From contig NC_083239.1 in the NCBI RefSeq assembly GCF_032191835.1, forward strand, positions 32,984,001-33,048,000: DNA of 64,000 nt. The letters run 5' to 3'. Below, piece after piece: positions 40,122 through 44,900 of the stretch. The notes below the pieces were generated by a model. The model was not told where the DNA came from and did no database searches. It saw only the letters and a program-made list of their open reading frames with translations. Both the position numbers and the translations under genes were made by a program. This stretch comes from Heteronotia binoei. Taxonomy: Eukaryota. Position 1 is the first letter of the stretch. Each line of letters starts with the position of its first letter.

Positions 40122-40520
40122 ATGGAAGAGGAGGATCCAGAAGGCAAGAGTCCTCATCCCACCCAGGCTGGGAGTGGTGTGGAATACTGGGAAAGAGTTG
40201 TGCCAGAGAACCTGTCTCAGTACCCTATGACTGCAGAGGTATGTAACCAATGGTTCTGGCAGTTCCGCTACCATGAGGCTGATGGACCCTGAGAGATTTG
40301 CAGTCAGCTCCATGGACTTTGCAACCAGTGGTTGGAGCCAGAGAGGAACACCAAGAAACAGATCTTGGACCTGGTGCTCTTGGAACAGTTTCTGCCCATT
40401 TTGCCCCAGGAAATACAGTGCTGGGTGAGAGGATGTGAGCCCAAGACCAGTTCCCAAGCAGTGGCCCTGGCAGAAGGTTTCCTCCTGAGCCAGGCAGAGG
40501 AGAAGAGGCAGGCAGAGTAG
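40122..40520 (+). pseudogene. Unit 3 SCAN exon disrupted by two nonsense codons
   Basis: In-frame TGA at 40290-40292 (paralogs have CGA/CGT in GPRE) and TAG at 40518-40520 (paralogs CAG) just before the GTGAGA donor; otherwise clearly SCAN ([27 protein letters not shown]). Confidence 0.9.
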
Positions 40521-40611
40521 GTGAGAGGGTGTCCTTTGCTCAGTTCCAGCAAGGATCTTATCCTAAGGCTTCCCTGCCAGATATTTCTACCTTTAGAGAA
40601 TTTACTAGGCT

Positions 40612-41272
40612 TTGAATGAATTAATATTTGTTTCCAGTCAAAGAACATTATTTACAAGCACAGGCAATTAACCATAGTACATCCTTATTAAAACCACCAA
40701 AAATATTCCAAAAAGTATATTTGATCATTCAAACCTTGTAAGAATCCAAAAAGTCTAAAATAAGTCTAAAACGTCAAATATAAAATGTCTATAAAATCAT
40801 ATATATCCTACAATTCCAGCAAGTCATACAAATCATACCGAATCATATTTCTTATTGTGGAATTTTACCAAATGGTAATAGAATTTAGCTATTTGTCTGG
40901 AGATAAGCGGATTTTCATCAGCTGAAAGTTTCTCCAGGCAGGCCTTGTCTGCATCTGCTATTGTTCCATCTAAAAATGGGGAAATAAACTTATTCCTATA
41001 TACTTGATGGAATGGACATCGCAAGAACATATGGATCATTGATTCCCCTTCTCCCATGGAACAAGGCCAACATCTGTCTTCATATGGGATCTTCCTATAT
41101 TTCCCATATAGCACCTTTGAAGGAATAACTGCACATCGAGTCAAAGTAAAGGCTGTTCTATAAGATAGCACCTCCAAATAGGTGAGGCATTTGGCCATCC
41201 TCATGACATGTTTGGACTCAATAGGTGCCAAAAAAGACAGGGCTTGCATTAGATCCCATTGTCACTCTTGAC
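40612..41272 (-). mobile_element. 5' truncated non-LTR retrotransposon (ORF2 C-terminal CCHC zinc knuckle), clade uncertain
   Basis: ORF 40833..41249 RTAFTLTRC...GKYRKIPYEDRCWPCSMGEGESMIHMFLRCPFH; 12-bp TSD ATTTACTAGGCT (40600-40611, 41273-41284). Confidence 0.85.
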
Positions 41273-41286
41273 ATTTACTAGGCTGG

Positions 41287-41760
41287 TGTAAGGAAGAGAC
41301 TGGTTCTGGCCCAAGACAGCAACTCTGAAGAGCTAAAGGAGGCATAAAGAGGGAGGATTGACCTTGCAGGTCACTGCAGGAACTGTCCAGTTTTCATCTT
41401 GCTAGAGCACATAACTGAATCATCTTAATTAATAGCTGGACTGGAGGGAGGGAGAGGCAGTTTGTTAACAGGTTAACCTCAGGATAAAGCAAAGCAGGTG
41501 CGGGGGTTATCGCATGCTTTTTTGGGCAGGATACTCACCTGCCTTTGAGGTTCGAGTAAGTTGGCTGATTGTATTCATTTTGTTGTAGTTTGGTAGCCTT
41601 CAGAAGATGTTTAATCTTTGTGTGAGTAATTATTGTTATTCGAGGACACCTCACCTTCCCTTTAATAATAAAGGAACTTTGCCTGATTTGCTGGACTTGA
41701 GTGTGGACCTTAGAGCCGAGTATCTTGAGAGAGAATCTAAAAGCCTGCAGCCCTCCAGCA
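41287..41760 (+). mobile_element. Unclassified ~475-bp insertion with solo-LTR-like features
   Basis: Starts TGTAAGG, ends CCAGCA, internal AATAAA; absent from paralogous introns; no convincing TSD. Confidence 0.35.
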
Positions 41761-41910
41761 GAGCAGAAAACCCAACCCAGATTCTTGCCATGGAGTGGAA
41801 CCAGCTCTGCTGGCTGATGCACAGTTGAGAAGTCTGGGAGTGGGGCAGAATCCAGCTCCTTCAGCTTCTTCCATTTCTTCTCTTACTAGTCTCCCTAACC
41901 GTTATTTCAG

Positions 41911-44900
41911 ATGTGGACACCAGCTGTAAAGATGGAAGAGAAGTTTTGTGAGGCAGAAGGAACTCCGTCAGAGGAGAGTCAGAAGACGCAGTCCCAGAAG
42001 TGTGCCCAGGATTCCCTGTCAAATGGTAAGTGTGCCTCCTTCCCAAATGGGATTGGAGCACTTAAGTCAGGTCATTGGGTAGAAGATTTGGGGCACTAGT
42101 AAAAGGAAATACTTCTGTTCACTACGCAGATTCAACTACCGGGACTTAGTGCCACAGGATGTAGTGATGGCCACTCACTTAAAGGGGGAATAGACAGATT
42201 CCTGGAAGGCAATTCCACTCTTATTTAATTAAAATAGTTGTATTTCACTCTCCTTGCATTAGAGGGAGTCAGGGTGGTTCAAAAAAGAAAAGGAAGGCAA
42301 ATGTGGGTGCAGCTATTAGCCTCTGTGTTCCTCTGAGTTGGATAGCCCTAGCTAGCCCAATCTCATCAGGTCTCAGAACCTAAGGTGGGTAAGCCCTGAT
42401 TAGTCCTTGGATGGGAGACCACAAAAGAGAAGTTTGAAACATGTCGGTGGCATTTCTAACTGCCCACTGCCCAAGTCTCATGGGTACCTGGTGCTTCTCC
42501 TCCAACTCTCCCATAGTTTATTATTAAAAACTATTATAAATTTAACAATATACAAAGTTGAGGCTAAAATTCGCCCTTCCAATTTTCTCTCCCTTGCAGG
42601 CAGTGAAGAGATGTTGCCAAGCTGTCATCTTTGCAGTGGAGTGCAAATGTCTGCTTCCTCTCTGGTCCAGGTATGGGGATAAAAGGGGACAGTTTAGCCC
42701 ACTCCTTTCTCAAGGATGCCTTTGCTCCAGGTGTCTGAGCAAGAGAGCCTCTGAAAGCAGATCTCTTTACTCATAGCAAGCTCGGCATCCTGTACCCTCC
42801 CAGAATGCTCCCTGTTGAGAGTGTTTTCTTTGCCTGGAATGACCTGTGACAAGAGAATCTGCTTTGTCTTTCAGTCTCCCTTTTCCTTTGAGGAGGTGGC
42901 TGTGCATTTCACCATGGCTGAGTGGGCCCTGCTGGATCCAGGCCAAAAAGCTCTCTATAGGGAAGTCATGCTGGAGAATTACAGGAATGTGGCCTCTCTG
43001 GGTAAGTATCTTTCAAGAGTGCCAATTGCTGCCATTGGGATGATGCAGAAATCAAAATACTGAAAAGCAGTATGTGGTTGTGAGGCCTGTCCAGCTACTT
43101 GCCCCTTACTGGGGGCCTCCAGGACAGGCTACAGTGGAGAGAGATGAAAACTTGTGTCTGAAGAACAGCCAGAAAGTTTCTCAGGAAGATCTCAAGAGCC
43201 TCTTACTCTCCCAAATGACCTGCCTGCTAGTGAGTATCCTTCACAGTTATGTCAAGGGAATGAGCAAGGAATAGCACAGGACCTTTCCTCTTCACTTCTA
43301 TTGGCTTGGTAGAGTGATCAAGCCTGCTAGGTCAGGAGGAAGGGAGGCCTTCTGAGCCTGGGATGTGGAGATTCAGAATATCCTTCTGGGTCTAAGCTTG
43401 GCTGTGGCTGTTGAGGGGCTGCACTCCTTAAATACTGGATATTCCAGAAAAGGGTTTTTTTACCTAAGAACTGGACGAGGCCAAAAGGCACACCAACCCT
43501 TTTCTCCTGCAGTCTCCTGGATGACTTCATTCTTTAGGCGGAGATGGGTTTGAGTACTTTCTTTGGAGCTGTTCTACCCTGATAGTCCCACCAGTTGACA
43601 CTGCAACCCTAGAGGAACTGGCTGTAGCCAAACCACACAGCCCTCTCTGTTCTGGTGAGGGGGATTGGTCCTCACCCTAAAGGTGTGGGAACATGTGCTG
43701 TTGAAGAGATTCCCACTGACTCTATCAACCCAGTAAACACAGAGTCAAGTTCTCAGTTGAAGCATAGTTGGTTAAGCCACAACATAAGGAAAGCTCTGTA
43801 GTCTCCTCCAATGCTCCCTCTAAACTGTGGAGTTTTGTGAGCAAAAATTCTATTTCATGAGCTGCTGGCATTAAAGTTGTGAGTTACTGCATAAATTAGT
43901 TTGCTCTGGGGCCATTTTTCCTGAGCCAAGACAAAAATGTGTGAGCCAGAGGCTAAAAAACTGTGAGCTAGCTCACACGAACTCAGCTTAGAGGGAACAC
44001 TGGTCTCCTCCTGTCTCCCCAAGAGGCAAGTGACCAACTCCTCCCCAAGGGCTAAGTACCTTCCACTCTCTGGAAGCAGGAAAGCATCTGTAACAGAAAA
44101 ACAGATGCACACAGAGAGAAGAAGCCAGTTAGACCTGTCCGATCAGCCTGCCCCAATGCTCAGGTTTCTCCTAGGCTAACCAGCACTGTCTCCCCGTCTC
44201 CAGGGAAGGCGATTGAGAATGATGACAATGCTGTGCTGCTCTAAGTGCTGCCAAACTAACTTCCCTTCCATCACCCTGGTTAGGCTGATCACATGTTTAT
44301 GTGCCGGCTCACTGCATGTTGCAAGGGTTTGAGAAGGATGGAACAGGATAGACTCTTCTGGAGTTGCATCTGGACTTTTCAGCACTGTGTAGAGTGGAAT
44401 TCCAGGGGGCCAAACAAAATGACCTTGAGTCTCTGTAAGCCAGTCTTCTGGCTATCTTTTGCTGACCTTAAGAAAGTCTTCTTTCCAGAGAGACAGGCTG
44501 TGCTTCTTGGAAAGGCAGAAATACTTGGATGATTCAGACATGGCTGTGTATTAGTCAAGGCCTAGAGAATGGTGCAGAGATAGCAAGAAAATGGTTCTGT
44601 GTCGGTGGCCATACACTGCAGGGTTGCTTTTGTCATTGGTCATTACCTGTCGCCCTGACAACTGGTGCCTCTTCAAAAACCACAGGGGTCCCTTTTGAAC
44701 TGCAGGGTTCACTTTGTGAGCTCCTGGCTTCTAACTGCCCCATGGATAACGTGTATTTTTGGGAGGCTGAAAATCAGCTTCTTCTTGTTTCTCATCACAT
44801 CTAAAAGGACGCTCTTTGTGTCATTACCAGACTGGATATTTTGATAACTTCCTATATTTATTTGTCAAGATCAGAGAATCAAAAGTGCTTCAGGGCAAGG

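What the first reader, a model, noticed from the sequence alone, without database searches (positions are those of the whole stretch)
40122..42025. SCAN-domain loss in progress: gene 3 converts from SCAN-KRAB-ZF to KRAB-ZF
The SCAN exon has two independent nonsense codons, while the four downstream small exons and 16 fingers (2211 nt) stay fully open with good splice sites. The next exon starts with ATG (41911) and has a strong-context aagATGg at 41932. Skipping the SCAN exon, reinitiation after the 56-codon uORF, or a new promoter would give a ~730-aa non-dimerising repressor. It is a snapshot of how KRAB-only KZFPs can derive from SCAN-KRAB ancestors. A recent whole-gene pseudogene is the alternative.
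Basis: partly seen in the sequence, partly recalled or inferred. Interest (0 to 1): 0.7.

Follow-up and report, generated by a model that had tools for sequence, protein, structure and literature searches.

The report
Gecko KRAB-ZNF gene shedding its SCAN
One of four tandem SCAN-KRAB zinc-finger genes in a gecko has two stop codons in its SCAN-coding part, and one RNA contig shows a new in-frame splice donor that cuts out exactly that part, so the gene may survive as a plain KRAB zinc-finger repressor, although a freshly dead pseudogene is not excluded.

Summary
The window carries four tandem SCAN-KRAB-C2H2 paralogs of a gecko; the closest database proteins are from Heteronotia binoei. In gene 3, TGA at 40290 and TAG at 40518 replace CGA/CGT and CAG of all three paralogs. 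Exons 41911-42025, 42600-42670, 42875-43001 (KRAB-A), 45123-45245 and the 16-finger exon 46658-48429 are open, in phase and have GT/AG sites.

- A fifth ancestral exon (43126-43229) lost its acceptor in a 386-nt deletion and also has a 1-nt deletion.
- The finger array once ran to about 49330. Its tail has long been decayed.
- Both ATGs in exon 3 are ancestral codons.

One 173-nt contig joins 40238 to 41911 (GT..AG). Two gene-3-specific substitutions made a donor GAG|GTATGT inside the SCAN exon. It removes 282 nt (94 codons, Pfam SCAN positions 3-90) with both stops, in frame, leaving a 774-codon leader-KRAB-16-finger frame. This fits the published intronization model for stop-bearing exon sequence.

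Lesions are confined to the SCAN core, the skippable exon and the old tail (P about 0.013 for the two stops, a post-hoc test). SCAN loss is partly supported, by a different mechanism. A recent pseudogene keeps about one-third probability.

The parts
38754..38832 (+). Exon 1 (5'UTR). Its 5' end is not determined. Donor CAG|GTAAGA.
   Evidence: X2 contig record 9 covers 38754-38833 with 0 mismatches and then jumps to 39842. U1 duplex -11.0 kcal/mol.
39841..39995 (+). Extra 5'UTR exon between exon 1 and the SCAN exon. Its 3' boundary is uncertain by a few nt.
   Evidence: X2 record 9 covers 39842-39995 (5 mismatches in 154) and then continues at 40095 into the SCAN exon.
40097..40520 (+). Ancestral SCAN exon (acceptor ccacag|TTGG, ATG at 40122, native donor TAG|GTGAGA).
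   Evidence: Four-paralog alignment. tblastn of H. binoei proteins, residues 1-140.
40122..40238 (+). Retained coding leader: 39 codons, Kozak gagATGg. It carries an in-frame 24-nt deletion at about 40141-40144 relative to the paralogs.
   Evidence: No Pfam domain. The organism B contig has 12 more nt here, also in frame.
40236..40244 (+). New 5' splice site GAG|GTATGT. The exon would end at 40238.
   Evidence: X3 record 16 shows the joint 40236>41909, GT..AG with the cut +2, 35 nt on the shorter side. Paralogs read GAT GTACGT, GAT GTACAC and GAT GCACGC at this place. U1 duplex -6.6 versus -0.9, -0.7 and +1.4 kcal/mol.
40239..40520 (+). Intronised SCAN core: 282 nt = 94 codons = Pfam SCAN positions 3-90. 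It holds TGA 40290-40292 and TAG 40518-40520.
   Evidence: Gene-3-specific changes include C>W, R>W, A>P and E>K.
41911..42025 (+). Exon 3, phase 0 start. Holds the ancestral ATG at 41911 and aagATGg at 41932.
   Evidence: X3 record 16 (115 of 116 nt identical) and X1 record 6 (0 mismatches) lie on it.
42600..42670 (+). Exon 4 (71 nt).
   Evidence: X2 record 10 and X3 record 16 show the joint 42024>42599, GT..AG.
42875..43001 (+). Exon 5, KRAB A box (127 nt, ends in phase 1).
   Evidence: Pfam KRAB E 1.1e-22. Joint 42667>42872, GT..AG, in X2 record 10.
43126..43229 (+). Remnant of ancestral exon 6 (a phase 1-1 cassette). The acceptor and the first 18 nt were lost in a 386-nt deletion with its breakpoint at 43125/43126. 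A 1-nt deletion lies between 43150 and 43151.
   Evidence: Alignments. H. binoei P0001 and P0002 encode this exon.
45123..45245 (+). Exon 7, spacer exon (123 nt, phase 1-1). It resembles the start of the finger exon.
   Evidence: Its use in gene 3 RNA was not tested, because it lies outside the stretch that was laid.
46658..48429 (+). Finger exon: spacer plus 16 C2H2 patterns. The stop TGA 48427-48429 is a CGA>TGA change inside a frameshifted 17th finger.
   Evidence: The 1092 nt of canonical fingers have 0 indels and 0 stops.
48430..49330 (+). Decayed 3' part of the old array: about 3 broken fingers, a SINE-like insert at 48648-48915, then about 5 broken fingers. The homolog of the paralogs' terminal finger and 3'UTR lies at about 49290-49500.
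   Evidence: The aligned stretch 48370-49300, which includes the frameshifted 17th finger (48373-48429) that ends the open frame, has 11 frameshifting indels and 9 stops in the consensus frame; identity to the finger consensus is 0.80-0.83. Tail comparison with g1 and g2. Repeat copies.

Best explanation
Gene 3 is a lineage-specific SCAN-KRAB-C2H2 paralog that is turning into a KRAB-only zinc-finger gene by intronising its SCAN-coding sequence.

Two gene-3-specific substitutions turned a non-site inside the SCAN exon into a usable 5' splice site, GAG|GTATGT. They are T>G at 40238 and a CpG C>T at 40242. Splicing from 40238 to the unchanged acceptor of exon 3 (41911) removes 282 nt. That is 94 codons, essentially the whole SCAN domain, together with both nonsense codons.

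The original ATG (40122) stays in frame. The product would be a 39-residue leader, then exons 3 and 4, KRAB-A, the spacer exon and 16 fingers, 774 codons in all. Transcripts that still use the native donor carry a premature stop far upstream of later exon junctions and should be removed by nonsense-mediated decay. The SCAN-less product should therefore dominate. It could no longer dimerise through SCAN but would keep KRAB-mediated repression and its DNA-binding array.

Shown: the lesions, the ancestral states, the open phase-consistent exons, the donor-creating substitutions, and one spliced contig that uses the donor.
Inferred: NMD of the canonical form, translation of the new form, its function, and the order of events (donor first or stops first).
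For: - Lesions and ancestral states.
- X3 record 16 (173 nt, word depth 4.3) consists of 35 nt ending at 40238, then all of exon 3 (115 of 116 nt identical), then 22 nt of exon 4. Both joints are GT..AG. It is the only joint into the exon-3 acceptor in the three runs.
- Intron bins 39400-39799, 41200-41799 and 43200-43799 have zero depth, so the signal is RNA and not contaminating DNA.
- The donor is in frame: 40122-40238 is 39 codons and exon 3 starts in phase 0. It sits at SCAN profile position 2.
- U1 duplex energy is -6.6 kcal/mol, within the range of this gene's other donors (-5.4 to -11.0). The homologous site in the paralogs gives -0.9, -0.7 and +1.4.
- Every remaining exon is open with correct phases. 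The split codons are GGC, GCA and GGG.
- Lesion distribution: 2 stops in the 282-nt core and 0 lesions in 2325 nt of retained frame, P about 0.013 if the whole gene were neutral. Twelve CpG-prone CGA codons remain intact in the fingers.
- The neutral finger tail has 20 lesions in 642 aligned nt. The 1092 nt of retained canonical fingers have none, which shows long selection on the truncated array.
- Gene-3-specific pN/pS in the unique part of the finger exon is 0.46, not higher than in paralogs (0.56 and 0.94). In the SCAN core it is 0.31 against 0.13-0.25, with radical changes.
- Exon 6 is a phase 1-1 cassette and is absent from some relatives (P0003, P0005), so its loss keeps the frame.
- The S. 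townsendi model P0078 is a SCAN-less relative that starts in the last codons of the SCAN exon.
- The pattern matches the intronization model: a stop-bearing exon stretch of 3n length removed through a latent 5' splice site (PMC2586383).
Against: - The junction rests on one short contig of depth about 4 in one small metatranscriptome run from a single study. No raw reads were available and the isoform ratio is unknown.
- The family is large, so a near-identical copy elsewhere in the genome could be the source of that contig.
- NMD would enrich any frame-restoring isoform even if the gene has no function, so the contig shows feasibility and not function.
- The SCAN decay is young: the overall gene-3-specific substitution density in the core (0.075) equals that of the paralogs. 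The intact rest of the gene therefore has limited evidential weight. The P of about 0.013 is post hoc, in a genome with hundreds of such genes.
- The gene has further damage (dead exon 6, degenerate linkers in the last fingers, a truncated array).
- No DNA reads, no sister-species sequence, and no translation or protein evidence.
- Use of exon 7 and of the finger exon in gene 3 RNA was not examined, because read laying was limited to one call of 6000 nt.
Confidence: 0.55

Rival explanations
1. Gene 3 is a recently dead, still transcribed pseudogene. The gene lost function when the first SCAN stop (or exon 6) was hit. The rest is open only because too little time has passed. The internal donor arose by chance, and its in-frame product is seen only because NMD removes the other forms.
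For: - Lesions lie at three places in the gene: the SCAN core, exon 6 and the end of the array.
- The SCAN core shows little overall extra divergence, so relaxation is recent and few lesions are expected elsewhere.
- One of the two donor changes is a CpG transition, the commonest kind of mutation.
- Expression is low, about depth 4 on exon 3.
- Clusters of such genes are rich in pseudogenes (general knowledge of the family).
- g1 also shows damage in exon 6.
Against: - Both stops fall in 11% of the stop-mutation target, P about 0.013.
- There are no indels or stops in 2325 nt, against 20 lesions in 642 aligned nt of the truly neutral tail.
- All lesions outside the old tail fall in parts that splicing removes in frame.
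- The donor is in frame, sits upstream of both stops and lies exactly at the domain boundary.
- pN/pS of the finger-exon spacer is not raised.
Confidence: 0.33
2. A SCAN-less protein of about 730 aa starts at ATG 41911 or 41932, through skipping of the whole SCAN exon, reinitiation after the 56-codon upstream frame, or a new promoter.
For: Both ATGs exist, and 41932 has a strong context, aagATGg. The frame from 41911 is open for 735 codons. The S. townsendi model P0078 starts just before the exon-3 equivalent.
Against: - Both ATGs are ancestral internal codons.
- No 38832>41911 joint appears in the three runs. Exon 1 joins to 39842 and then to the SCAN exon.
- No contig starts at or near exon 3.
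- Forms that keep the SCAN exon carry a stop upstream of six exon junctions.
- Coverage is too low to exclude minor use of these routes.
Confidence: 0.07
3. The stops are not fixed features. They are assembly errors or a null allele of the sequenced individual, and the species' usual allele encodes an intact SCAN-KRAB-ZNF.
For: No DNA reads could be examined. Contigs in the same runs end the SCAN exon with CAG and not TAG (X2 loose end at 40515, X3 joint 40516>42870), although these look like paralogs.
Against: - The two C>T changes are independent and come with several radical gene-3-specific replacements in conserved SCAN residues (C>W, R>W, A>P).
- No alternative letter was reported at 40290 or 40518 in the three runs, although coverage of these positions by gene 3 contigs is not shown.
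- The contig that ends with GACAG differs at 3 of the last 5 nt, so it comes from another gene.
Confidence: 0.05

Closest known systems
Squamate SCAN-KRAB-C2H2 zinc-finger genes (SKZFPs), for example H. binoei 'zinc finger protein 135-like' P0001 and '773-like' P0002
   Same: Same exon plan: leader plus SCAN exon, two small exons, KRAB-A exon, spacer cassette exons, one large finger exon. SCAN residues are 73-78% identical, the KRAB 76% and the finger exon 68%. The genes are tandemly clustered and lineage-specifically expanded, as described for lizards (PMC3971581; bioRxiv 10.1101/2025.03.03.638093).
   Different: In gene 3 the SCAN reading frame is broken by two stops, exon 6 is dead, the array is truncated, and an internal donor removes the SCAN core.
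Intronization of stop-bearing exon sequence (Catania and Lynch 2008, PMC2586383)
   Same: The removed exonic stretch is 3n long (282 nt), carries premature stops, and is taken out through a latent 5' splice site near the 5' end of the gene. The frame is preserved, and an alternative-splicing transition phase is expected.
   Different: Here the removed stretch is a whole protein domain. It extends an existing intron (donor shift) and does not create a new one. Which came first, donor or stops, is unknown. Support is one contig.
KRAB-only relatives in other geckos, for example S. townsendi 'zinc finger protein 436-like' P0078
   Same: Same subfamily (exon-3-like, exon-4-like, KRAB-A, spacer and fingers), with no SCAN domain in the precomputed Pfam list. 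The model begins MRQGEQ-IWGPSVKMEAKF, within the last codons of what is the SCAN exon in relatives.
   Different: It is a predicted model in another species. Its start lies at the 3' end of the SCAN exon and not at the original ATG. Its genomic SCAN remnant was not examined.
Transcribed duplicated KZFP pseudogenes
   Same: Nonsense codons, a dead exon, a decayed finger tail and low expression.
   Different: Lesions are absent from 2325 nt of frame. All recent lesions lie in parts that splicing removes in frame.

Membership tests
SCAN-KRAB-C2H2 zinc-finger gene (SKZFP) | An open SCAN domain (Pfam PF02023) encoded near the N-terminus | tested here: not met
   SCAN homology is present (E 1.3e-26 for the piece after the first stop), but stops at 40290 and 40518 interrupt it. 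Paralogs g1 and g4 have intact SCAN (E 7e-37 and 6e-36).
SCAN-KRAB-C2H2 zinc-finger gene (SKZFP) | A KRAB A box between the SCAN domain and the fingers | tested here: met
   PF01352, E 1.1e-22, profile positions 2-42 of 42, exon 42875-43001.
SCAN-KRAB-C2H2 zinc-finger gene (SKZFP) | A tandem C2H2 finger array in one large 3' exon | tested here: met
   16 C-x2-C-x12-H-x3-H patterns. Pfam zf-C2H2 finds 15 stretches.
KRAB-only zinc-finger gene (functional KZFP) | A continuous open frame from a start codon through KRAB and the fingers in a spliced mRNA | tested here: inconclusive
   By phase arithmetic the frame is continuous: 774 codons from ATG 40122 through the 40238 donor. Contigs show leader-E3-E4 and E3-E4-E5 separately. 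No single molecule spanning the leader to the fingers was seen.
KRAB-only zinc-finger gene (functional KZFP) | Purifying selection on the KRAB and finger exons after loss of SCAN | tested here: inconclusive
   No lesions in 2325 nt against 2 in the 282-nt core (P about 0.013, post hoc). pN/pS is 0.46 in the finger-exon spacer, and counts for KRAB-A are tiny (1 N, 1 S). No ortholog or population data were available.
KRAB-only zinc-finger gene (functional KZFP) | Translation, and repression through TRIM28/KAP1 | not testable with these tools
   No Ribo-seq, proteomic or binding data were at hand.
Intronization of stop-bearing exon sequence | The removed stretch was ancestrally coding and now holds premature stops | tested here: met
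   Three paralogs and H. binoei proteins code through it. Gene 3 has TGA and TAG there.
Intronization of stop-bearing exon sequence | Length is a multiple of 3 and the frame is preserved | tested here: met
   40239-40520 is 282 nt. The leader ends in phase 0 and exon 3 starts in phase 0.
Intronization of stop-bearing exon sequence | The spliced form is observed in RNA with canonical ends | tested here: met
   The joint 40236>41909, GT..AG (cut +2), is seen in one contig of run X3 with a 35-nt shorter side. This is a single observation.
Pseudogene (non-functional duplicate) | Disabling lesions spread over the gene at the neutral rate | tested here: not met
   Recent lesions occur only in the SCAN core and in exon 6. 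The retained frame has none, while the neutral tail has 20 in 642 aligned nt.
Pseudogene (non-functional duplicate) | No productive transcript or protein | tested here: inconclusive
   Spliced transcripts exist, one of which restores the frame. Translation was not tested.

The most novel reading that the evidence does not exclude
Gene 3 is a natural intermediate, caught in the act, in which premature stops together with a newly created internal 5' splice site convert a SCAN-KRAB-ZNF into a functional KRAB-only ZNF. It would be an example of stop-associated intronization deleting a whole protein domain in a vertebrate. It would also show one route by which KRAB-only and SCAN-KRAB subfamilies interconvert in squamates.
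Probability: 0.5. Interest if true: 0.6.

Novelty: new member of a known kind. Interest (0 to 1): 0.45.

Why it matters
Squamates carry hundreds of SCAN-KRAB, SCAN-only and KRAB-only zinc-finger genes (PMC3971581). How these architectures interconvert is mostly inferred from gene counts. Here a single locus shows all the ingredients together: the ancestral state in three neighbouring paralogs, two nonsense codons, the two substitutions that create an in-frame donor at the domain boundary, and an RNA contig that uses it.

If the SCAN-less product is functional, the locus is a concrete, testable example of domain loss by intronization (Catania and Lynch 2008). It would also be an example of a dimerising repressor becoming a non-dimerising one. 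If it is not functional, it is an ordinary young pseudogene. In that case it illustrates how NMD and a chance splice site can make a dead gene look alive.

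Tried and rejected
- A protein search with the spacer of the finger exon found no protein encoded by the window itself and no close ortholog. The best hit was 66% identical (H. binoei). Ortholog-based dN/dS was therefore impossible.
- A search for short translated RNA fragments containing exon 3, meant to see its upstream partner independently, failed. The first query was too short. The 44-residue reference query found no candidate.
- Paralog-based N/S for the finger array was abandoned. 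Finger orthology among g1, g2 and g3 is not colinear, and the contact residues differ throughout.
- Counts of gene-3-specific substitutions in introns versus exons were too noisy to date the relaxation. Intron flanks are as conserved as exons in places.
- I considered that exon 6's frameshift kills the gene, and rejected this as decisive. Exon 6 is a phase 1-1 cassette that lacks its acceptor, so it would simply be skipped in frame. Cryptic acceptors at 43164 and 43173 would also keep the frame.
- The X3 joint 40516>42870 and the X2 loose end at 40515 were considered as evidence for an allele without the TAG. They fit other family members better, because the sequence differs in the last 5 nt.
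- Rfam found nothing on the highly represented repeat at 43810-44004.
Exons were searched separately by reference, and continuity of the frame rests on phase arithmetic.

Full report
**Context.** The window has no N runs. It holds four tandem, same-strand paralogs with the plan SCAN exon, small exons, KRAB-A exon, spacer exons and one large C2H2 exon. Their SCAN exons start at 7855 (g1), about 21600 (g2), 40122 (g3, the finding) and about 57035 (g4, cut by the window end). Introns are 72-85% identical between paralogs, so the duplications are old. The best database proteins are predicted SCAN-KRAB-ZNFs of the gecko Heteronotia binoei. They are 66-68% identical in the finger exon and 73-86% in SCAN. 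No protein of the window itself is in the database, so the source is a related, unannotated gecko.

**Checking the observation.**
- Translating 40122-40535 gives a SCAN exon with TGA at 40290 and TAG at 40518.
- In the four-paralog alignment the first stop replaces CGA, CGA and CGT. The second replaces CAG, the last codon before the donor, in all three paralogs. Both are derived C>T changes, and the first is at a CpG.
- Pfam recognises SCAN after the first stop (E 1e-26) and KRAB in 42875-43001 (E 1e-22).
- Using H. binoei proteins as guides and paralog alignments, the downstream exons are E3 41911-42025, E4 42600-42670, E5/KRAB-A 42875-43001, E7 45123-45245 and the finger exon 46658-48429.
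- All of them are open, have AG/GT boundaries and have consistent phases. The split codons are GGC, GCA and GGG.
- There are 16 C2H2 patterns. ATG 41911 and aagATGg 41932 are present.

- Paralogs and H. binoei proteins have another exon, E6, between KRAB-A and E7. In g3 a 386-nt deletion (g2 25388-25773) removed the pyrimidine tract, the AG and the first 18 nt. The remnant 43126-43229 also has a 1-nt deletion. E6 is a phase 1-1 cassette and is missing from some relatives (P0003, P0005), so skipping it keeps the frame.
- The open frame ends in a finger with two frameshifts and a CGA>TGA stop. Behind it lie about three broken fingers, a SINE-like insert (48648-48915) and about five more broken fingers. 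The homolog of the paralogs' last finger and 3'UTR comes only at about 49290-49500.
- Aligned to the consensus of the retained fingers, this tail has 11 frameshifting indels and 9 stops in 642 aligned nt, with 80-83% identity. The 1092 nt of retained canonical fingers have none, with 91% identity. The array was therefore truncated long ago, and the remaining fingers were kept by selection for a long time afterwards.
- The two ATGs of E3 are ancestral internal codons. Paralogs and H. binoei read Q-MW...VKMEE there.

**RNA evidence.**
- Only three small RNA runs of one study share words with the gene, and they are kept as Logan contigs. I laid them on 38600-44599.
- Intron bins have zero depth, so the signal is RNA.
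- An X2 contig joins exon 1 (38754-38833) to an extra 5'UTR exon (39842-39995) and on into the SCAN exon. It has 12 more nt after 40141 and about 3% mismatches, so it comes from a diverged taxon or allele.
- X2 and X3 contigs show E3-E4 and E4-E5 joints with GT..AG.
- The only joint into the E3 acceptor is in X3 record 16 (173 nt, depth 4.3). It consists of 35 nt ending at 40238, E3 (115 of 116 nt identical) and 22 nt of E4. It skips 1672 nt with GT..AG ends.
- Position 40238/40239 reads GAG|GTATGT. The paralogs read GAT GTACGT, GAT GTACAC and GAT GCACGC. Two g3-specific changes therefore made the site.
- Predicted pairing to the U1 5' end is -6.6 kcal/mol. The gene's other donors give -5.4 to -11.0, and the paralog sites give -0.9, -0.7 and +1.4.
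- The donor is in frame: 39 codons from ATG 40122, and E3 starts in phase 0. It lies at SCAN profile position 2. It removes 282 nt, or 94 codons, that hold both stops.
- The resulting frame is 774 codons. I did not send the joined model to any search or folding tool. Exons were searched one by one by reference.

**Selection.**
- Gene-3-specific changes, scored where the other paralogs agree, give a pN/pS of 0.31 in the SCAN core. The paralogs give 0.13-0.25. The g3 replacements are radical and hit conserved residues: C>W, R>W, A>P, E>K and the stops.
- The overall substitution density in the core (0.075) is no higher than in the paralogs, so relaxation is recent.
- In the unique part of the finger exon, g3's pN/pS is 0.46, against 0.56 for g1 and 0.94 for g2. 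That is no sign of extra relaxation, but power is low.
- If the whole gene were neutral, the two stops would both fall in the core with P about 0.013 under three mutation models. Twelve CGA codons in the fingers are intact.
- This test is post hoc, and the genome holds very many such genes.

**Interpretation.** The best reading (0.55) is intronization of the SCAN core through a new internal donor. The gene would continue as a leader-KRAB-16-finger gene. Forms that use the native donor would be NMD targets. This matches the model of Catania and Lynch (PMC2586383): a stop-bearing exon stretch of 3n length near the 5' end, removed through a latent 5' splice site, with a phase of alternative splicing. 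SCAN-less relatives exist as gene models in other geckos (P0078). Squamate SCAN, SCAN-KRAB and KRAB subfamilies are known to expand lineage-specifically (PMC3971581; bioRxiv 10.1101/2025.03.03.638093).

**Rivals.** The main rival (0.33) is a young transcribed pseudogene, with an incidental donor and a frame-restoring isoform enriched by NMD.

**Limits.**
- The key junction rests on one contig in one run.
- There were no raw reads, no DNA reads and no ortholog.
- A near-identical copy elsewhere in the genome cannot be excluded.

**Verdict.** This is a new member of known kinds (lineage-specific KZFP turnover, and intronization). Interest is moderate.

Noticed in passing
window 43810-44004 (copies on the minus strand at 37780-37969 and 53977-54157): A repeat of about 195 nt flanked by the target-site duplication GTCTCCTCC. 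The summed contig depth is 40,000-67,000 in all three RNA runs, so it is very high-copy or highly transcribed. It has no Rfam match.
   Followed up: partly
window about 10470-10590 (g1 exon 6), 15301-15303 and 32483-32485: g1's exon 6 has a 19-nt (frameshifting) deletion. g1 and g2 share a TAG (AAG>TAG) inside their last finger, whereas H. binoei P0001 keeps the lysine there.
   Followed up: partly
window 48648-48915 (copies at 9808-10041, 8791-9000 and 52045-52304 minus): A SINE-like element is inserted in the decayed finger tail of gene 3. The same element sits in intron 5 of g1.
   Followed up: partly
window 39841-39995: An X2 contig splices an extra 5'UTR exon between exon 1 and the SCAN exon. 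Its 3' junction is not cleanly GT..AG on this assembly.
   Followed up: partly
window 40141-40144: Gene 3 has an in-frame 24-nt deletion in the leader relative to the paralogs. The organism B contig (X2) has 12 more nt here, so the deletion is only 12 nt in that taxon or allele.
   Followed up: no
window 43017-43125: X2 contig record 11 is 96% identical to intron 5 and stops fitting exactly at the 386-nt deletion breakpoint. Organism B may lack the deletion.
   Followed up: no
window 61841-62081 and 62600-62840; also 45047-45530 and 12250-12460: The E7-type spacer exon resembles the start of the finger exon and is followed by finger relics. It is duplicated in g4. H. binoei P0002 and P0007 encode two such units.
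   Followed up: partly
window 27326-28111: A 261-codon open frame that looks like a CR1/L2-type reverse transcriptase, in an intron of g2.
   Followed up: no
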